From contig NIVC01004502.1 in assembly GCA_002269645.1 (NCBI GenBank), positions 1-43,914 on the forward strand: 43,914 nucleotides of DNA. Reading direction: 5' to 3'. How positions within the stretch are numbered: the first letter of the stretch is position 1; every line of letters begins with the position of its first letter. This DNA comes from Macrostomum lignano (Eukaryota). The notes under the pieces are model-generated. The model did not search any database. It was not told the DNA's origin and saw only the letters and a program-made list of their open reading frames with translations. Below are positions 2,665 through 39,770 of the stretch, piece by piece. A program made the position numbers and the translations under genes.

Positions 2665-3968
2665 TATCTTATCCCTCTTGTCTACTTTGATGTCTCACTC
2701 ATGCCTCCTCTTTTATCTCTCATATCCATTCTAATCTCTTCTCTCTCCACTATTATCTATACTTTCTCCTCACCCTCTTATCTATCCTCTCCACTCATAT
2801 CTTCCTCCCTCTTTCCTCTTTTTTCAAGAGATGTTTCATTAAATGAATCATGCTCAAACAACACGGGTGTATCAAAAGGTCGATAGTCGCTCAGGTAGAT
2901 ACTGAACTCAGAAGTTGACGCATTCGACTTTCACACACCCCGCTCCACCTACAGAGAAAGCATCTTTGCAGCCCCGGGGGCAGGTCTGCTACACGAGACC
3001 GGGCCATGATTTGGCTCATTTCGGCGGCCGTCCAATCCAAAGTTCGCCAGCACCCGTGACAACCGATATAAAAGCCTGATGCGGCGGCCCCCGGCGGTCT
3101 CTTCCCTGCTCTCCTCGCGAAGGTCTGCTAAAACAAAAAATTGAAATCAAAGGAAGCAAGAGAAAGTTGACAAACTTGCCCTGTGCATCCGGGAGCAACT
3201 TTCTAAGAAGCATTCAAACAATTTTTCCGACCAAGGTGCGAAGCGTTTTGTTACATCTCAGAGACAAACAAGAAAGGTGAGAGCTGCGAGGGACTCCCTT
3301 GTATCAAAAAGTGCATAGATTGCTAATCTACGCACATGGTGCGTGGCTGTCGTATTTCTGAAACATACAGTAATTTAGCGAGAAATATGTAAACATGTAG
3401 CAGGGATTTTCCATTCTGAACTGGCTTTTCAGTCGATCTCCCAGTTTGCCTGTACCGGCTCTCCCTCAGCCTTCCTCCTCCCGAGCCTGCCTATCTGCCC
3501 ATGCATATCTTCCATCGTCGACGAAGGATCAACACTGCCTGCAGCCAATGCGTCGGTAGCATTGAGAACTCCTGCACCCGTGGGCCCTGTTCGAGCCATC
3601 AAGTAATCGAATAAAGAAAAATTTCACAAAAAATCCATTTGAGATCGGCGTGTCTGGCGATCGCACCTCGGTCTTCGATGGTGATCCCATGGCTCTGCGC
3701 CACCATTACTGGGCCAAAAAATTGCCATCTTCTCACTCTGCTGGACTCGGCTCCCGGGTCTTCTTTCGCGCCTTGTCTGTTCCTCTGTGACGAGCGGAAT
3801 ATTCCATGCTCTCCGCTATTCAATAGAAAATAATGCAAAATATTTTTGTTACATCTGGACTGGATGCTTGTAATTCGTGCGAAATTAGAAAAATGGTAAA
3901 TCAATGAAGGCTCTGTTGAAAAAATGGATATTTCAGTCCTCATTTAAATCTTTTACTCTCCCTCTCTA

Positions 3969-4000
<32 letters not shown>

Positions 4001-5802
4001 ACCCTCCTATCCCTCTTTCTTACTTTACTCCTTTCTCTCCTACATTACCTCTCGCATGCGCCCAGTTAAGAAAATACTAAATAAACCAATCTAAATTAAG
4101 AGAATATTATATAGATTTAAATTAGAGTTAAATTGAATAGTAAGAGAAGTGGGTGAGGCCACAGGGCCCAAACCAGTTATGTATAAGACATTAACTTAAG
4201 GGGGTTGAGTCCAGAATAATTAAAAAAGGGTGGAGTGCGCTACTAAGTAGAGGCAAGAATGGAGAGCCAATCAGAAGGCGGCGAGGGAGAGAGATAATAA
4301 TAACAAGATCGAATTAGACAAGAGAGAGAGAGAGAGAGAGAAAACAGAGTAAACAGAGACAAGTGAGGGTGAACTGAAGAAATGGAAATGACTAAGAAAG
4401 TCGTCGTGACAAAAATAAAAGAAACGAAACGAAATAGAAAAGACCGCTTTTCATGTCGGATGGCCGATGCATCTTGGTGGTGTGATTTAGGCAAAATTGG
4501 CGAACTCTAGCCAATGATTTGTGGGAGCAGCAAGAAACAGCGTTAACGCCTAAATGATAAAGACAGACAAGACGAGACAGACGACAGTGCTTGTAGCAAT
4601 GTAAAATTAGCAATGTACAATCGGGAAAGAGGTTAAGGGTGTCGTGAGCGCACTTGGGGGGCAGAGAAATTCGGGGCGGGGCAGACTGGCGGAGGGGGGT
4701 TGGGGAACGGCGCGAGAAATCTGAGTGGTGGGGGAGCCGCCACTCTATCCCTTCATTTTACCACTCGCTCTGGCTTCTAGTGAGATATCGATTTTTATAA
4801 CCGCCTCATTGACACCAGGCAGCATTGAAAACCGCCACCCTACCGGTACACTTTGGCCCTGCAACTGCAATTGATGCAATGTTTTCTAACTCTCGCTCAG
4901 GCGTACAGGGTGGCGGTTTTTAATGTTGCTGATTGATTGACTTTGATTTAACTGCAGAGGTCCAGATCCGACCCGACACAGGGGACGCAGGGGAAGGCGC
5001 CTTCTATCTCGCTCTTCACGGCGTGCTGAACTTGCTTTCGCGAGCAGACCACAAGTTCACGACTGATACAATGCACGTGAAGTCCAGCTGCTTTAACTTA
5101 TCTGCAGCGTCCCTTGATCTCAGAGCTGTCTTCAAAGACAAGCTGAGTTTGTCTTTCTTGCAAGCCAAACTTAGGAATTCGCTAGTAACAAGCCAGGCTT
5201 GACTAATTCGAATTTGCTATGCAGCTTGTTCGAAATTTAAAAGTACGATTGATAAGTACGCACTCTCAGGGCTCATTTTGAGTGGTGCCTGTTTGTTTGG
5301 TGAAGGGCATTGTTCCTTCAGAACGGGCCCCTCGTGTAAATACAGCGGCGGTATCAGTATCCACCAGTAGCAGACTCGAGCACTTTTGCGTAGCACTGTG
5401 CCTCCTATCATCACTAGGAGTGTAATGCATTCCACTGAGCATTGGCAAGTTTGGGCGGGACACTGAGCACCACCCAATATAAGTTCCCGAATGGATATCT
5501 GTAGCCCGGAGTGGCGAATCAATTGTATTACGCGACTCCAGAGAGCGAGATCCCTCTGTCTGGCAGAAAGATGAGAGCAGCCTGCTAGTGCAGGTTCCCC
5601 TGATCCTTGGCTTGTATCTCTCCAGTGACCAGTCCCGCCTTGATATTGAATTTAATAACGAATTTTTGCGCAGAATAAGAATTGAGAGAAGAGAGATAGA
5701 CAGAGAGCAGGGTTTAGCAGACGGACTCAAATTCATTTAACGATTTCTTTTTTGTCCAGCATTAAAAATAATCAATTTGATCTTTCTAAAACTGTCTGCA
5801 GG

Positions 5803-6327
5803 ATGCTGACTCTGAAGCTGTTCCGCCTTGTCATGGCGGTGCAGTGCTGCCTGCTGCTGGGCGCCCTGATTGGCTGCTGCGATGCCCGAGAAGACGACAA
5901 CGATGAGCTCAGCTCTGTTGAACGGCGAGGCGCTTACTACGGCCTGTTGGGCAAGCGAGGCCCTTACCATCGCCTTCTAGGAAAGCGAGCTGGATATCGC
6001 GGCCTGCTCGGAAAGCGAGCTGGATATCGCGGCCTGCTCGGAAAGCGAGCTGGATATCGCGGCCTGCTCGGAAAGCGAGCTGGATTCCGAGGCCTGCTCG
6101 GAAAGCGAGCTGGATATCGCGGCCTGCTAGGAAAGCGAGCTGGATATCGCGGCCTGCTCGGAAAGCGAGCTGGATTCCGCGGCCTGCTCGGAAAGCGAGC
6201 TGGATTCCGCGGCCTGCTCGGAAAGCGAGCTGGATACCGCGGCCTCCTGGGCAAGAAGCGAGTTTATCAGCGCCTGTTAGGCAAGCGAGACGGAAGCCCG
6301 TCGCATGGCGCGGCTCTGCAGGAGTAG
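5803..6327 (+). CDS. Neuropeptide precursor (prohormone), 174 aa, releasing 12 predicted C-terminally amidated LL-amide peptides
   Basis: ATG 5803 follows a splice acceptor (tctttctaaaactgtctgcag|g). Hydrophobic signal peptide MLTLKLFRLVMAVQCCLLLGALIGCCDA, acidic spacer REDDNDELSSVE-RR, then 6x AGYRGLL-GKR/GKKR, 3x AGFRGLL-GKR, GAYYGLL-GKR, GPYHRLL-GKR and VYQRLL-GKR; stop TAG 6325-6327; AATAAA at 6482. Confidence 0.95.
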   Translation: MLTLKLFRLVMAVQCCLLLGALIGCCDAREDDNDELSSVERRGAYYGLLGKRGPYHRLLGKRAGYRGLLGKRAGYRGLLGKRAGYRGLLGKRAGFRGLLGKRAGYRGLLGKRAGYRGLLGKRAGFRGLLGKRAGFRGLLGKRAGYRGLLGKKRVYQRLLGKRDGSPSHGAALQE

Positions 6328-7973
6328 AGACAAAGCCAAGCTAGGACAGAGAAAGAAGAGATAGGAGCGAAAAAATATATATTGTCTGGATGCCATGCAA
6401 AAATTAACAATATACTGAACCCACACAAGCGTGAGCCTGGTTAAATCGACAGCTTAAAATATACAAAATTATTTTATTCGAAATAAATTTGTCACATGGA
6501 AAGTGCAACAATCATTGCAACACCGCAGTATATGAGGCTGTGGACTCGTCGCTTTGCTTTTCTAACTGTGACGAAATAAAAAATCAGGAATGATCAGAGA
6601 CCGAAAGCTACCGGTAAGATGGATCAAGAGACAAGCAGTTGGATTAGAGACAGGCTAATCATAATAATTACGAGTATAATGATCAGCGAAAGGTTGACAG
6701 ACCAGACTGACCAGAGAATGATCAGAGAACAGAATGAATAGACAGGCAAAACCTGATCAAAGCCTGCTGCTGCAGACAATAACAATGTCAACCGATATCG
6801 AAGATCGCCCCAACATCAGACTTCAGCATCGCTATCAAGATAAAGTCACATGACCCGATTTGCTTCACTCGATCAGGTTTAAAAAGTAGACTAAGGCATA
6901 ATGCACGTATGCGGTCAGCATTGAATTCAACTCGGTAATTATTAATACTTCGATGTATTTAGTTTTCATATTAATAATTTGAGACAGAAAAATGAGAGCT
7001 GTCTGAATTAAACTTGCTCAAATTTACTAGATGACCGGTGATTTTAGAGACTAGATTACTAGGATACAAGGGGGTACACATTTTATGAGTCACATGATCA
7101 GAGATTTCAATCACAAGAGTAGCAAATAGCAAAGGTTATGAATAGCGGAATAGACAAAGCCAATAAAACGGGTATAGAGCAAACGGAGAGCCGAATAATA
7201 AAAATTCATCAAATTCGTTTCCCTGCTGCGTAAAAAAGGCACATAAATAATCGCAGCATAATACTAAATCAAGTAATACTAATCGAGCATTGTGTTTAAA
7301 TTAAAAAGTTGCACAAAACACAAAAAGAAAATAAAAAGTTGACCAAAAACATTGTAATACAGGAAGAGCAGAGCAGGTGTATATAGAAGTTATAAAATAA
7401 ATAGATAAGGCGGTGTAATATAAATGAAACATTCGAATGAGATTCAAAAGCTAACAATTAAGTAACACTGGCAGTTTTAATAAAACGGGTAGCAGTGAGT
7501 TTCGGTGCATGTATTTATCATAGATCAGAGGCTAGAGAAGTTATTGACCACCCGGAGAGGTGCAACATCGGCGGAATATTCAAAATTTTAGTACAAGAAC
7601 CTTTGCCGATATGTTGCGTAAAAACTTTATCGAGGTATAATTTCCAAATTCAAATCTCGCAGTGGCCCGATTCGCGCCAAAGATTCTGCATGATAACAAG
7701 ACAAGTACAAATGATAAGTCCAAAGGCACACACAAACTCGGATGAGAGTGCACTTGCACTTCAAGTACTGTGAGTACTGTGCCTAGCCCTCATCGGCGGA
7801 ATTCCTCACAGAACTGACGCGAAGTGTTTATCAGTATTTATTTTAATACGATGCACCTGCATGGCAGCCCACTCTTATTTATCAGTATAGTACTGACAAC
7901 ACACATATTGATCCTGATTGTTTTCGTCGTACACAAATGTTGATTGAGCATTCTGTGAACTCTGAATTTAATA

Positions 7974-8168: not shown

Positions 8169-24122
<15,954 letters not shown>

Positions 24123-27668: not shown

Positions 27669-35686
<8,018 letters not shown>

Positions 35687-35784: not shown

Positions 35785-38640
35785 CCCTCTCCCTTTGCCT
35801 GCGCCCCCTCCCTTCCTCTGCCTGTGCCCTCTCCCTTCCTCTGCCTGTGCCCTCTCCCTTCCTCTGCCTGTGCCCTCTCCCTTCCTCTGTCTGTGCCCTC
35901 TCCCTTTGCCTGCGCCCTCTCCCTTCCTCTGCCTGCGCCCTCTCCCTTCCTCTGCCTGTGCCCTCTCCCTTCCTCTGCCTGTGCCCTCTCCCTTCCTCTG
36001 CCTGTGCCCTCTCCCTTCCTCTGCCTGCGCCCTCTCCCTTCCTCTGCCTGTGCCCTCTCCCTTCCTCTGCCTGTGCCCTCTCCCTTCCTCTGCCTGTGCC
36101 CTCTCCCTTCCTCTGCCTGTGCCCTCTCCCTTCCTCTGCCTGTGCCCTCTCCCTTCCTCTGCCTGTGCCCTCTCCCTTCCTCTGCCTGTGCCCTCTCCCT
36201 TCCTCTGTCTGTGCCCTCTCCCTTTGCCTGCGCCCCCTCCCTTCCTCTGCCTGCGCCCTCTCCCTTCCTCTGCCTGTGCCCTCTCCCTTCCTCTGCCTGT
36301 GCCCTCTCCCTTCCTCTGCCTGTGCCCTCTCTCTTCCTCTGTCTGTGCCCTCTCCCTTTGCCTGCGCCCCCTCCCTTCCTCTGCCTGCGCCCTCTCCCTT
36401 CCTCTGTCTGTGCCCTCTCCCTTCCTCTGCCTGCGCCCTCTCCCTTCCTCTGCCTGTGCCCTCTCCCTTCCTCTGTCTGTGCCCTCTCCCTTTGCCTGTG
36501 CCCTCTCCCTTTGCCTGCGCCCTCTCCCTTCCTCTGTCTGTGCCCTCTCCCTTTGCCTGTGCCCTCTCCCTTTGCCTGCGCCCTCTCCCTTCCTCTGTCT
36601 GTGCCCTCTCCCTTCCTCTGCCTGTGCCCTCTCCCTTCCTCTGCCTGTGCCCTCTCCCTTCCTCTGCCTGTGCCCTCTCCCTCTCCCTTTGCCTGTGCCC
36701 TCTCCCTTCCTCTGCCTGTGCCCTCTCCCTTCCTCTGCCTGTGCCCTCTCCCTTCCTCTGCCTGTGCCCTCTCCCTTCCTCTGTCTGTGCCCTCTCCCTT
36801 TGCCTGTGCCCTCTCCCTTTGCCTGCGCCCTCTCCCTTCCTCTGTCTGTGCCCTCTCCCTTCCTCTGCCTGTGCCCTCTCCCTTCCTCTGTCTGTGCCCT
36901 CTCCCTTTGCCTGCGCCCCCTCCCTTCCTCTGCCTGTGCCCTCTCCCTTCCTCTGCCTGTGCCCTCTCCCTTCCTCTGTCTGTGCCCTCTCCCTTTGCCT
37001 GCGCCCCCTCCCTTCCTCTGCCTGTGCCCTCTCCCTTCCTCTGCCTGTGCCCTCTCCCTTCCTCTGTCTGTGCCCTCTCCTTTGCCTGCGCCCTCTCCCT
37101 TCCTCTGCCTGTGCCCTCTCCCTTCCTCTGCCTGTGCCCTCTCCCTTCCTCTGCCTGTGCCTCTCCCGCTCCCTTTGCCTGTGCCCTCTCCCTTCCTCTG
37201 CCTTTGCCCTCTCCCTTCCTCTGCCTGTGCCCTCTCCCTTCCTCTGCCTGTGCCCTCTCCCTTCCTCTGCCTGTGCCCTCTCCCTTCCTCTGCCTGTGCC
37301 CTCTCCCTTCCTCTGCCTGTGCCCTCTCCCTTCCTCTGCCTGTGCCCTCTCCCTTCCTCTGTCTGTGCCCTCTCCCTTTGCCTGCGCCCCCTCCCTTCCT
37401 CTGCCTGCGCCCTCTCCCTTCCTCTGCCTGTGCCCTCTCCCTTCCTCTGCCTGTGCCCTCTCCCTCTCCCTTTGCCTGTGCCCTCTCCCTTCCTCTGCCT
37501 TTGCCCTCTCCCTTCCTCTGCCTGTGCCCTCTCCCTTCCTCTGCCTGTGCCCTCTCCCTTCCTCTGCCTGTGCCCTCTCCCTTCCTCTGCCTTTGCCCTC
37601 TCCCTTCCTCTGCCTGTGCCCTCTCCCTTTGCCTGCGCCCTCTCCCTTCCTCTGCCTGTGCCCTCTCCCTTCCTCTGCCTGTGCCCTCTCCCTTCCTCTG
37701 CCTGCGCCCTCTCCCTTCCTCTGCCTGTGCCCTCTCCCTTTGCCTGCGCCCTCTCCCTTCCTCTGCCTGTGCCCTCTCCCTTCCTCTGCCTGCGCCCCCT
37801 CCCTTCCTCTGCCTCTGCCCTCTCCCTTCCTCTGCCTGTGCCCTCTCCCTTCCTCTGCCTGTGTCCTCTCCCTTCCTCTGCCTGTGCCCTCTCCCTTCCT
37901 CTGTCTGTGCCCTCTCCCTTTGCCTGTGCCCTCTCCCTTTGCCTGTGCCCTCTCCCTTCCTCTGCCTGTGCCCTCTCCCTTCCTCTGCCTGTGCCCTCTC
38001 CCTTCCTCTGTCTGTGCCCTCTCCCTTTCTCTGCCTGTGCCCTCTCCCTTTGCCTGTGCCCTCTCCCTTTGCCTGTGCCCTCTCCCTTCCTCTGCCTGTG
38101 CCCTCTCCCTTCCTCTGCCTGTGCCCTCTCCCTCTCCCTTTGCCTGTGCCCTCTCCCTTTGCCTGTGCCCTCTCCCTTCCTCTGTCTGTGCCCTCTCCCT
38201 TCCTCTGCATGTGCCCTCTCCCTTTGCCTGTGCCCTCTCCCTTCCTCTGCCTGTGCCCTCTCCCTTCCTCTGCCTGTGCCCTCTCCCTTTGCCTGTGCCC
38301 TCTCCCTTCCTCTGCCTGTGCCCTCTCCCTTCCTCTGCCTGTGCCCTCTCCCTTCCTCTGCCTGTGCCCTCTCCCTTCCTCTGCCTGTGCCCTCTCCCTC
38401 TCCCTTTGCCTGTGCCCTCTCCCTTCCTCTGCCTGTGCCCTCTCCCTTCCTCTGCCTGTGCCCTCTCCCTTCCTCTGCCTGTGCCCTCTCCATTTGCCTG
38501 TGCCCTCTCCATTTGCCTGTGCCCTCTCCATTTGCCTGTGCCCTCTCCCTTCCTCTGCCTGTGCCCTCACCCTTCCTCTGCCTGTGCCCTCTCCCTTCCT
38601 CTGCCTGTGCCCTCTCCCTTCCTTTGCCTCTGCCCCTCTT
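35785..38640. repeat. ~2.85-kb pyrimidine-rich composite satellite (23-bp and 17-bp units)
   Basis: Units CCCTCTCCCTTCCTCTGCCTGTG and CCCTCTCCCTTTGCCTGTG-type variants; stop-free in all six frames. Confidence 0.98.

Positions 38641-39075: not shown

Positions 39076-39770
<695 letters not shown>

What the first reader, a model, noticed from the sequence alone, without database searches (positions are those of the whole stretch)
5803..6327. Multi-copy AG(Y/F)RGLL-amide neuropeptide precursor with a vertebrate-tachykinin-like C-terminus
Seen: signal peptide, acidic spacer and 12 peptides each ending G-KR (one G-KKR): AGYRGLLa x6, AGFRGLLa x3, GAYYGLLa, GPYHRLLa and VYQRLLa. Established: Gly plus dibasic sites mark PC1/PC2 cleavage and amidation; deuterostome tachykinins end F-X-G-L-M-amide, while protostome tachykinin-related peptides end F-X-G-X-R-amide. 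Inference: (Y/F)-R-G-L-L-amide follows the F-X-G-L-M pattern rather than the protostome one, and also recalls flatworm RG(L/M)I-amide peptides and allatostatin-A/buccalin GL-amides. I cannot assign it to a named family, so it may be an uncharacterised ligand with an unknown GPCR.
Basis: partly seen in the sequence, partly recalled or inferred. Interest (0 to 1): 0.75.

Follow-up and report, generated by a model that had tools for sequence, protein, structure and literature searches.

The report
Flatworm RGLL-amide neuropeptide precursor gene
This is a real, transcribed gene of the flatworm Macrostomum lignano whose product would be cut into twelve small amidated signalling peptides; the core of those peptides (FRGLL-amide) was already found by mass spectrometry in planarians, so it is a new member of a known flatworm peptide family that still has no identified receptor, not a new kind of signal.

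Summary
Window 5803-6327 (+) is a 174-aa ORF with a signal peptide, an acidic spacer and 12 Gly-dibasic-flanked peptides: AGYRGLL x6, AGFRGLL x3, GAYYGLL, GPYHRLL and VYQRLL.

The window is the whole contig NIVC01004502.1 of the Macrostomum lignano assembly. That annotation is transcript-based, and the gene is called in it. The gene has a TATA box, an ATG-free 5'UTR exon, a 2.5-kb intron, a single coding exon and AATAAA signals. A ~99% identical duplicate locus differs by one in-frame 30-bp unit.

The peptide is not unprecedented. Schmidtea mediterranea spp-13 encodes FRGLLamide x2, which Collins et al. 2010 detected by mass spectrometry and filed under 'miscellaneous amidated peptides'. M. 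lignano also has a paralogue encoding [A/D][M/V]YSGLLamide, and a published 'buccalin-like' npp-9 peptide (GAYSGFL-G).

The tachykinin resemblance (F-x-G-L-L) is real as a motif, but it fails the protostome FxGxRamide rule and could not be tested at receptor level. A buccalin/allatostatin-A affinity is at least as plausible.

Verdict: a genuine multi-copy neuropeptide precursor and a new member of a known, receptor-orphan flatworm family. Interest is modest.

The parts
3067..3074 (+). TATA-like box (TATAAAAG), about 40-50 nt upstream of the annotated 5' end of the transcript
   Evidence: Read directly. The same sequence sits upstream of the annotated gene start of the duplicate locus (L002 9953-9960). 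Its function as a promoter is inferred.
3116..3276 (+). Exon 1: non-coding 5'UTR exon (161 nt, no ATG)
   Evidence: It is homologous to the first exon of the transcript-based model BOX15_Mlig014178g1. The 54-residue N-terminal extension of that model (P0001) is the conceptual translation of this exon spliced to the acceptor at 5801. One search found no ATG in the exon, so the first AUG of the spliced mRNA is 5803.
3277..5801 (+). Intron (2525 nt), donor GTGAGA, acceptor ...CTGTCTGCAG
   Evidence: The junction reproduces the ...DKQER|M reading of P0001.
5802..6600 (+). Exon 2: holds the whole coding sequence and the 3'UTR (3' end approximate)
   Evidence: AATAAA signals lie at 6482-6487 and 6575-6580. 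The true poly(A) site was not determined.
5803..6327 (+). Coding sequence of the 174-aa prepropeptide (stop codon included)
   Evidence: The deposited transcript-based annotation calls a gene at exactly these coordinates.
5803..5886 (+). Signal peptide (aa 1-28, predicted cleavage after CCDA)
   Evidence: Hydrophobicity profile and the -3/-1 rule. No dedicated predictor was available, so the cleavage site is inferred.
5887..5928 (+). Acidic spacer REDDNDELSSVE plus RR cleavage site
5929..5988 (+). Two divergent leading units: GAYYGLL-G-KR and GPYHRLL-G-KR
   Evidence: GAYYGLL resembles the YSGLL and YSGFL peptides of the M. lignano paralogues.
5989..6261 (+). Array of nine 30-bp units encoding AG[Y/F]RGLL-G-KR (6 Y, 3 F; the last unit ends G-KKR)
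   Evidence: The duplicate locus has ten units through one in-frame 30-bp insertion.
6262..6288 (+). Trailing divergent unit VYQRLL-G-KR
6289..6327 (+). C-terminal non-amidated peptide DGSPSHGAALQE plus stop codon
6482..6487 (+). First AATAAA polyadenylation signal (a second lies at 6575-6580)
   Evidence: Read. Both are conserved in the duplicate locus.

Best explanation
This is an expressed Macrostomum lignano gene for a secreted prepropeptide. It belongs with the flatworm FRGLL-amide peptides, first described as planarian spp-13.

Proposed mechanism:
1. The mRNA is a non-coding exon spliced to one coding exon. It is translated from its first AUG.
2. The 28-residue signal peptide takes the product into the secretory pathway.
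3. A prohormone convertase (PC2-type) cuts after RR, KR and KKR.
4. A carboxypeptidase removes the basic residues.
5. Peptidylglycine alpha-amidating enzyme converts each C-terminal Gly into an amide.

One precursor therefore yields 12 amidated peptides: AGYRGLLa x6, AGFRGLLa x3, GAYYGLLa, GPYHRLLa and VYQRLLa. These are most likely released by peptidergic neurons and act on a still unknown rhodopsin-type GPCR.

What is shown: the ORF grammar, the gene structure, RNA-level evidence through the transcript-based annotation, conservation in the duplicate locus, identity of the core pentapeptide with a planarian peptide verified by mass spectrometry, and the presence of a nervous-system PC2 in this species.

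What is inferred: the actual processing and amidation in M. lignano, neuronal expression, the receptor, and orthology (as opposed to convergence) with spp-13.

My confidence is about 0.9 that it is a genuine amidated-peptide precursor and about 0.65 that it is orthologous to spp-13.
For: - Complete precursor grammar at 5803-6327. The G-L-L-G-K-R pattern occurs 9 times against 0.03 expected.
- Among repeat units, only conservative Y/F changes occur at protein level; the rest are synonymous.
- The deposited annotation calls a gene at these coordinates. That annotation was built only from RNA-seq and transcriptome assemblies.
- The paralogue model P0001 carries the translated 5'UTR exon. This proves a spliced transcript, and the same exon, donor and acceptor are present in the window.
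- Between the window and the duplicate locus, the CDS differs at 1 of 525 sites plus one in-frame unit indel. The 3' intron differs at 7 of 502 sites and the 3'UTR at 12 of 373.
- Smed-spp-13 encodes FRGLLamide x2. The peptide was observed at 603.45 against a calculated 603.37, and my own calculation gives M = 603.386.
- An M. lignano PC2 homologue is expressed in the nervous system and is essential.
- An exhaustive HMMER search found a collinear M. lignano paralogue (P0003, YSGLLamide x9-10) and an environmental GS[M/L]RGLLamide x10 precursor (P0004). The rest of the hit list consists of other multi-copy neuropeptide precursors mixed with non-secretory repeat proteins.
Against: - There are no peptidomic or in situ data for M. 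lignano.
- Similarity to spp-13 is confined to the FRGLLGKR units. The rest of the two precursors does not align, so convergence on a 5-residue motif cannot be excluded. My rough estimate of a chance exact match is 1e-3 to 1e-2.
- spp-13 has 2 copies and no AG extension.
- No relatives were found in parasitic flatworms (the top of the hit list).
- The signal-peptide call rests on a hydrophobicity profile, not on a dedicated predictor.
Confidence: 0.8

Rival explanations
1. The [Y/F]RGLLamide/FRGLLamide family is a derived buccalin/allatostatin-A-type system. The peptides would be the ligands of the AstA-type receptors that flatworms possess and for which no flatworm ligand is known. This concerns the deeper classification and is compatible with the best explanation.
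For: - Molluscan buccalins end F-x-G-G-[I/L]-amide.
- M. lignano provides a graded series: SIFSGVLa and [A/D][M/V]YSGLLa (P0003), GAYSGFL-G (npp-9, called 'buccalin-like' by McVeigh 2009 as cited), GAYYGLLa and AGYRGLLa (this gene).
- P0003 and this protein are collinear and 47% identical.
- S. mansoni has an AstA/buccalin receptor orthologue but no known buccalin-like peptide.
- A polyclad larva expresses an AstA/buccalin precursor.
Against: - The penultimate Gly of buccalins, and the F-G-L of arthropod AstA, are not present.
- The series is an ordering by eye of 5-7 residue peptides and has no statistical power.
- True AstA precursors (YxFGLamide) scored far lower than P0003 and P0004 in the HMMER search.
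- I could not read McVeigh 2009 itself.
Confidence: 0.25
2. This is the missing flatworm tachykinin: an F-x-G-L-[M/L]-amide-type ligand of a tachykinin receptor.
For: - [F/Y]-R-G-L-L-amide matches F-x-G-L-M-amide at every fixed position except a conservative M to L change. Zebrafish NKBb naturally ends FVGLLamide.
- No tachykinin has been found in flatworms, so the slot is empty.
- Unit by unit, KR-AGFRGLL-GKR aligns with protostome TKRP units KR-APFNGMR-GKR (A, F, G, GKR identical; P0033, P0060). The HMMER score per unit is as high as for P0003 and P0004.
- A receptor clustering with tachykinin receptors was reported in one monogenean transcriptome.
Against: - Flatworms are protostomes, whose endogenous tachykinin-related peptides end F-x-G-x-R-amide. 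The C-terminal Arg-amide is replaced here by Leu-amide.
- The peptides are shorter (7 aa) than typical tachykinins.
- GPCR surveys of S. mansoni, S. mediterranea and F. hepatica report only weak or no tachykinin-receptor affinity. The monogenean hit could be fish-host contamination.
- The other peptides on the precursor (GPYHRLLa, VYQRLLa) lack the F-x-G core.
- Pfam reports no match to any family.
Confidence: 0.1
3. The gene is a genuine secreted multi-copy peptide precursor but not a neuronal one. It could be a gland product, for example a pheromone, an antimicrobial peptide, or a seminal or adhesive secretion.
For: No tissue expression data were available for this gene. M. lignano has many gland-specific secreted products. 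Neuropeptide-like peptides are secreted externally in some spiralians (buccalin in snail-conditioned water).
Against: Short C-terminally amidated peptides in many tandem copies between dibasic sites are the signature of neuropeptide precursors. The planarian counterpart was recovered in a neuropeptidome study. PC2 in M. lignano is expressed in the nervous system.
Confidence: 0.07
4. It is a chance ORF across one of the many minisatellites of this repeat-rich contig and has no biological function.
For: The window contains more than 20 tandem arrays, several with periods divisible by 3, and they generate many long spurious ORFs. The antisense strand of this very array also gives a 96-aa ORF.
Against: - The ORF has a signal peptide, and the first AUG of the spliced transcript opens it.
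- The divergent flanking units keep the same x-L-L-G-K-R frame.
- Variation among units is synonymous or Y/F only.
- The indel between the two loci is exactly one unit, and the CDS is more conserved than its flanks.
- The gene is supported by transcripts.
- The core peptide is identical to one verified by mass spectrometry in planarians.
Confidence: 0.03

Closest known systems
Schmidtea mediterranea secreted peptide prohormone-13 (Smed-spp-13, UniProt E3CTK4; Collins et al. 2010, PMC2953531)
   Same: The mature core is identical. FRGLL-amide equals the last five residues of AGFRGLLa, and AGYRGLLa differs only by F to Y. Both have the same Gly-KR amidation and cleavage grammar, a signal peptide plus an acidic or neutral spacer, the same phylum, and no assigned bilaterian family or receptor.
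   Different: The planarian gene has 2 copies against 9 (window) or 10 (duplicate locus) in M. lignano, plus three variant peptides. The M. lignano peptides carry an N-terminal Ala-Gly. The precursors do not align outside the peptide units. The planarian peptide has been verified by mass spectrometry; the M. lignano peptides have not.
M. lignano BOX15_Mlig004832g1 (PAA49395.1; P0003) and the 'buccalin-like' Ml-npp-9 peptide GAYSGFL-G (McVeigh et al. 2009, as cited in PMC9114394)
   Same: They come from the same species and have the same architecture: signal peptide, short spacer ending RR, one odd first peptide, then an array with a 10-residue period. P0003 is 47% identical overall. They share the C-terminal Y-x-G-[L/F]-L-amide. 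GAYYGLLa of this gene is intermediate between the two.
   Different: Position -4 is Ser instead of Arg (YSGLL against YRGLL). They are separate loci on different contigs. Whether they share a receptor is unknown.
Environmental precursor P0004 (JGI sample 3300030741) and planarian npp-2 (RGLIamide x6)
   Same: Both are multi-copy x-R-G-L-[L/I]-amide peptides between KR sites. P0004 units GS[M/L]RGLL-GKR share R-G-L-L-amide exactly.
   Different: An aliphatic residue (M or L), or no residue, replaces the aromatic residue before Arg. The source organism of P0004 is unknown. npp-2 peptides end in Ile-amide and are only about 4 residues long.
Tachykinins (deuterostome F-x-G-L-M-amide; protostome tachykinin-related peptides F-x-G-x-R-amide)
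   Same: They share the aromatic-x-Gly-Leu-hydrophobic-amide C-terminus. Protostomes also have multi-copy precursors. Zebrafish NKBb ends FVGLLamide.
   Different: The C-terminal residue is Leu, not Met or Arg. The peptides are shorter. There is no receptor evidence. No tachykinin has been reported in flatworms.
Buccalin / allatostatin-A family (mollusc F-x-G-G-[I/L]-amide; arthropod Y-x-F-G-L-amide)
   Same: They share an aromatic residue at -5, Gly at -3 and Leu-amide at the C-terminus. They have highly multi-copy precursors. Flatworms have AstA-type receptors that lack a known ligand.
   Different: Position -2 is Leu instead of Gly. The match rests on only 3 of 5 positions, and no receptor test has been done.

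Membership tests
Amidated multi-copy neuropeptide precursor (generic class) | N-terminal signal peptide | tested here: met
   Residues 1-28 have a basic n-region, a hydrophobic core and small residues at -3/-1. This is a profile-based judgement; no SignalP-type tool was available.
Amidated multi-copy neuropeptide precursor (generic class) | Each peptide is flanked by dibasic convertase sites and ends in Gly as amide donor | tested here: met
   All 12 units qualify: RR upstream of the first, G-KR after eleven units and G-KKR after one.
Amidated multi-copy neuropeptide precursor (generic class) | The gene is transcribed | tested here: met
   The gene is called in an annotation derived only from RNA-seq and transcript assemblies. 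The spliced 5'UTR exon is recovered through the paralogue model P0001.
Amidated multi-copy neuropeptide precursor (generic class) | Mature amidated peptides are detectable, and the gene is expressed in peptidergic neurons | not testable with these tools
   This needs peptidomics and in situ hybridisation. Only the planarian FRGLLamide has mass-spectrometry support. M. lignano PC2 is neural.
Flatworm FRGLL-amide peptides (spp-13 type) | Mature peptide ends in F-R-G-L-L-amide | tested here: met
   Three units are AGFRGLL-G and six are AGYRGLL-G. spp-13 yields FRGLLamide x2.
Flatworm FRGLL-amide peptides (spp-13 type) | Precursor homology outside the peptide units | tested here: not met
   BLASTP aligns only the FRGLLGKR units, with E about 1e-4 for the pairwise comparison. 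This is usual for short-peptide precursors at this evolutionary distance, so it does not exclude orthology.
Flatworm FRGLL-amide peptides (spp-13 type) | Presence in intermediate flatworm lineages, and a shared receptor | not testable with these tools
   No flatworm transcriptome collection was available. The protein searches returned only M. lignano, S. mediterranea and one unidentified environmental sequence.
Tachykinin family | C-terminal F-x-G-L-M-amide (deuterostomes) or F-x-G-x-R-amide (protostomes) | tested here: not met
   The peptides end [F/Y]-R-G-L-L-amide. The protostome Arg-amide is absent, and Met is replaced by Leu relative to the deuterostome form. A natural FVGLLamide tachykinin exists in zebrafish, so this is a near miss to the deuterostome motif.
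Tachykinin family | A tachykinin-receptor orthologue exists in the same genome and is activated by the peptide | not tested
   The M. lignano proteome and genome could not be searched with a receptor query here. The literature shows no clear tachykinin receptor in S. mansoni, S. mediterranea or F. hepatica and one candidate in a monogenean transcriptome.
Tachykinin family | Match to a curated family profile | tested here: not met
   A Pfam-A scan at E up to 10 returned only two insignificant DUF hits.
Buccalin / allatostatin-A family | C-terminal F-x-G-G-[I/L]-amide (molluscs) or Y-x-F-G-L-amide (arthropods) | tested here: not met
   Position -2 is Leu, not Gly. The aromatic residue at -5, Gly at -3 and Leu-amide are shared.
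Buccalin / allatostatin-A family | Continuity with accepted buccalin-like peptides of the same species | tested here: inconclusive
   P0003 (SIFSGVLa, xxYSGLLa) is collinear and 47% identical. npp-9 GAYSGFL-G is called buccalin-like in the literature. The chain of resemblance is suggestive but rests on very short motifs.
Buccalin / allatostatin-A family | Activation of an AstA/galanin/kisspeptin-type receptor | not testable with these tools
   Such receptors are reported in S. mansoni (Smp_203500) and F. hepatica without a known flatworm ligand.

The most novel reading that the evidence does not exclude
The [Y/F]RGLL-amide peptides of Macrostomum, together with planarian FRGLL-amide, are the long-missing tachykinin-type ligands of flatworms. 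A protostome lineage would then use an F-x-G-L-[M/L]-amide-type C-terminus endogenously instead of the protostome F-x-G-x-R-amide. That would blur the deuterostome/protostome motif divide and give a ligand to a flatworm tachykinin-like receptor.
Probability: 0.1. Interest if true: 0.6.

Novelty: new member of a known kind. Interest (0 to 1): 0.3.

Why it matters
The finding puts a name and a relative on two M. lignano 'hypothetical proteins'. It also extends the planarian FRGLL-amide peptide (spp-13) to Macrostomorpha, an early-branching flatworm lineage. If the two are orthologous, the peptide is old within the phylum.

M. lignano is the flatworm with working transgenesis and RNAi. A 9-10-copy precursor with a defined promoter region is therefore a convenient handle for three things:
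- labelling a peptidergic cell population;
- deorphanising a flatworm GPCR;
- testing whether this family is the ligand of the orphan AstA-like receptors, or of tachykinin-like receptors. Those receptors are discussed as anthelmintic targets.

In itself it is an ordinary neuropeptide gene.

Tried and rejected
- **Literature string searches.** Searches for RGLLamide, GLLamide, RLLamide, AGYRGLL, GYRGLL, GFRGLL, YRGLLG and RGLLGKR found nothing relevant in main texts. 'spp-13' plus 'planarian' gave no main-text hits. The spp-13 link came only from the supplement tables of Collins 2010.
- **McVeigh et al. 2009.** The key flatworm npp catalogue is not held, by DOI or by PMC id. I therefore cannot say whether this gene already has an npp number. 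[quoted passage not shown]
- **Word-index protein searches.** The search with the window protein returned only the M. lignano duplicate. The search with spp-13 returned only spp-13 itself. This tool missed P0003 and P0004, which the exhaustive HMMER search then found.
- **HMMER hit list.** Most of the 267 hits are other multi-copy precursors (leucokinin FxxWGa, AstA YxFGLa, EFLamide, FRxDLamide, TKRP FNGMRa) or junk repeats that align through the periodic GKR linkers. P0052 and P0122 (LPGRGLLGRR repeats) were rejected as non-secretory repeat translations.
- **Metagenome DNA scans.** Two scans for tandem RGLLGKR and GLLGKR units gave 0 and 4 hits. The one double hit (L006) is a GFLGKSLTKK repeat, not a peptide precursor. 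The three single hits lie in contigs of 4-76 kb and were not inspected.
- **Source organisms of the TKRP-like hits.** P0033 and P0151 come from untyped metagenome assemblies, so the organisms could not be identified.
- **Other checks.** Pfam and Rfam gave nothing. The supplement of the polyclad atlas held no sequences. L002 was not exposed to the Python sandbox, so I compared the loci with DNA alignment instead.
- **Antisense ORF.** The 96-aa ORF at 5964-6254 on the minus strand was rejected as the mirror image of the array.
Full report
**What is in the sequence.** Window 5803-6327 (+) is an ATG-to-TAG ORF of 174 codons. It reads as follows.
- Residues 1-28: MLTLKLFRLVMAVQCCLLLGALIGCCDA. This has a basic n-region, a hydrophobic core with Kyte-Doolittle means of 2.0-2.9, and small residues at -3/-1.
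- Residues 29-42: the acidic spacer REDDNDELSSVE followed by RR.
- Twelve peptides, each followed by Gly and KR (once KKR): GAYYGLL, GPYHRLL, nine AG[Y/F]RGLL (six Y, three F) and VYQRLL.
- A C-terminal tail, DGSPSHGAALQE.

Tandem Repeats Finder sees a 30-bp period, 9.1 copies and 94% matches at 5972-6245. A degenerate pattern for G-L-L-G-K-R matches 9 times, all in this frame, against 0.03 expected by chance.

The contig is unusually rich in minisatellites, with more than 20 arrays that generate many long meaningless ORFs. A repeat alone therefore proves nothing here. This array is different for four reasons:
- A signal peptide opens it.
- It is punctuated in frame by amidation and cleavage sites.
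- Divergent units on both sides keep the same x-L-L-G-K-R frame.
- Among the nine central units the only amino-acid change is Y/F, while four other variable sites are synonymous third positions.

[quoted passage not shown] A gene is called at exactly 5803-6327. That annotation was built solely from RNA-seq and transcriptome assemblies plus TransDecoder ORFs, so the call is itself RNA-level evidence.

The only close database relative is P0001, 'hypothetical protein BOX15_Mlig014178g1, partial', on contig NIVC01002405.1. Its 54-residue N-terminal extension is the conceptual translation of an upstream exon spliced onto an acceptor one base before the ATG. The same exon is present in the window:
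- TATA-like box at 3067-3074.
- Exon 1 at about 3116-3276, containing no ATG.
- Donor GTGAGA at 3277.
- Acceptor CTGCAG ending at 5801.

The first AUG of the spliced mRNA is therefore 5803. AATAAA signals lie at 6482 and 6575.

The two loci are about 99% identical, and both are followed by a KY-like/transglutaminase gene on the minus strand. This fits the 180 Mb of duplicated blocks at 95% identity or more in this hidden-polyploid assembly. Divergence between the two loci is:

| Region | Differences |
|---|---|
| CDS | 1 of 525 sites, plus one exactly in-frame 30-bp unit |
| 3' part of the intron | 7 of 502 sites |
| 3'UTR | 12 of 373 sites |

The window has nine central units and the duplicate has ten.

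**Mechanism.** The grammar is that of a classical prepropeptide:
1. The signal peptide is removed.
2. A convertase cuts at RR, KR and KKR.
3. A carboxypeptidase trims the basic residues.
4. The exposed Gly is converted to a C-terminal amide.

This would give twelve amidated peptides per precursor, nine of them nearly identical. These steps are inferred from established prohormone biochemistry, not shown for this protein. Two facts support the inference. M. lignano has a PC2 homologue that is expressed in the nervous system and is essential. In planarians the equivalent peptide has been observed in its amidated form (see below). The receptor is unknown; a rhodopsin-type GPCR is the default expectation.

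**It is not unprecedented.** No paper in the searchable library contains the strings GYRGLL, GFRGLL or RGLLamide in its main text. The supplement tables of Collins et al. 2010 (PMC2953531), however, list Smed-spp-13. The UniProt sequence (E3CTK4) is MKFTIYTVLTATLWIFLVQTEEAEIPQKDFLQNYDLIPNYEQRIEDSWRDPDRIRLMKKFRGLLGKRVHAKRFRGLLG.
- Its predicted products are FRGLLamide x2.
- 'KK.FRGLLa.GKR' appears among the peptides characterised by mass spectrometry in asexual S. mediterranea, observed at 603.45 against a calculated 603.37. My own calculation gives M = 603.386.
- The gene is filed under 'Miscellaneous amidated peptides' and is not marked as previously predicted.
- No Schistosoma relative is listed.

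So the last five residues of AGFRGLLamide are identical to a verified planarian peptide. Outside the peptide units the two precursors do not align. That is normal for short-peptide precursors, but it leaves convergence possible. I put orthology at about 0.65.

**Relatives found by exhaustive search.** A full HMMER scan of 1.84 billion representatives gave 267 hits at E up to 1e-3. Most are other multi-copy precursors that align through the periodic GKR linkers: leucokinin-like FxxWGa, AstA YxFGLa, EFLamide, FRxDLamide and TKRP FNGMRa. Others are junk repeats. Only two are informative.
- **P0003.** This is PAA49395.1, another M. lignano 'hypothetical protein'. It encodes SIFSGVLamide and nine to ten [A/D][M/V]YSGLLamide copies. 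It is collinear with this protein (signal peptide, short spacer ending RR, an odd first peptide, then the array) and 47% identical. It lies on a different contig.
- **P0004.** This comes from an untyped JGI sample and encodes GS[M/L]RG[L/V]Lamide x10. Its units differ at many synonymous sites.

In addition, the literature attributes to M. lignano a 'buccalin-like' npp-9 peptide, GAYSGFL-G (McVeigh 2009, cited).

- For it: [F/Y]-R-G-L-L-amide differs from F-x-G-L-M-amide only by M to L, and zebrafish NKBb ends FVGLLamide. No tachykinin is known from flatworms. Protostome TKRP units (KR-APFNGMR-GKR, P0033) align with KR-AGFRGLL-GKR at A, F, G and GKR.
- Against it: flatworms are protostomes, whose endogenous peptides of this family end in Arg-amide, and that defining feature is not met. 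GPYHRLLa and VYQRLLa lack the F-x-G core. GPCR surveys of S. mansoni, S. mediterranea and F. hepatica show no clear tachykinin receptor. Only one monogenean transcriptome has a candidate, which might be host-derived.

The buccalin/AstA reading is at least as good.
- For it: buccalins end F-x-G-G-[I/L]-amide. M. lignano offers a graded series running FSGVLa, YSGLLa/YSGFLa, YYGLLa, YRGLLa. Flatworms do have AstA-type receptors without a known ligand.
- Against it: the penultimate Gly is missing, and the argument rests on 5-residue motifs.

Neither assignment can be settled without receptor phylogeny and pharmacology, which I could not do here. Pfam recognises nothing.

**Verdict.**
- The interpretation as a neuropeptide precursor is supported.
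- The claim of an unassignable, uncharacterised ligand is only partly right. The gene is the Macrostomum member, greatly amplified in copy number, of the planarian FRGLL-amide (spp-13) kind, and part of a small M. lignano family of [Y/F]-x-G-L-L-amide precursors.
- The family as a whole remains unclassified and has no known receptor.
- The tachykinin link is a lead, not a finding (about 0.1).
- Novelty: new member of a known kind. Interest: modest (0.3).

The most useful follow-ups are peptidomics with the masses given, in situ or reporter expression, a motif survey across flatworm transcriptomes, and deorphanisation against tachykinin-like and AstA-like receptors.

Noticed in passing
L002 12670-13275 (NIVC01002405.1) against P0001: The genome at the duplicate locus encodes ten central AG[Y/F]RGLL units, but the deposited protein model P0001 has eight. 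The look-up reports that the locus does not translate to the model. The transcript-derived annotation has apparently collapsed two repeat units. Copy number is therefore 8 (model), 9 (window) and 10 (duplicate locus).
   Followed up: partly
window 11535-23500 (-): A large KY (kyphoscoliosis-peptidase-like)/transglutaminase-core gene lies downstream on the opposite strand (Pfam PF23265 at 21627-22325; PF01841, weak, at 13107-13670). Many minisatellite arrays (periods 14-45 bp) lie within its span. The same neighbour follows the duplicate locus.
   Followed up: partly
window 32845-33446, 35792-38635, 39076-39767: An (AGAC)150 microsatellite and a (TCTG)173 microsatellite are reverse complements of each other. 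They flank a 2.8-kb array of a 23-bp pyrimidine-rich unit (about 128 copies), giving an inverted-microsatellite arrangement. All of them generate very long spurious ORFs.
   Followed up: no
window 33480-33768 (-): A short exon-like stretch has a weak match to the cation-efflux (ZnT/CDF) family (PF01545, E = 0.008, below the curated cut-off). It lies directly next to the (AGAC)n array and could be a fragment of a zinc-transporter gene.
   Followed up: no
L004 6001-6807 (NIVC01003891.1): This is a second M. lignano precursor (PAA49395.1) encoding SIFSGVLamide and [A/D][M/V]YSGLLamide copies. After the last intact unit the ORF runs on into the same repeat read in a shifted frame (…GSERCTPACSGSEICTPDFLESE…). 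That suggests an indel in the array or an assembly error.
   Followed up: partly
L003 1-976 (JGI 3300030741): An environmental contig encodes GS[M/L]RGLLamide x10. Its first ~100 bases appear, read by eye, to be largely the reverse complement of about 170-300, which looks like a cDNA hairpin artefact. The ORF lacks a signal peptide, probably for that reason. The source organism is unknown.
   Followed up: partly
P0033, P0060, P0151 (untyped ENA and Tara-type assemblies; L009, L010): These tachykinin-related-peptide precursors (APFNGMRamide repeats) carry the element MVYRQLL-[M/I]KR just before the array. It resembles VYQRLL-GKR at the end of the window's array. This may be chance, but it is the only similarity between the window protein and a true TKRP precursor beyond the A-x-F-x-G…GKR unit alignment.
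   Followed up: partly
window 5964-6254 (-): The antisense strand of the peptide array is open for 96 codons (PRRPRYPARFPS repeats). I take it as a by-product of the in-frame repeat, not a gene.
   Followed up: yes
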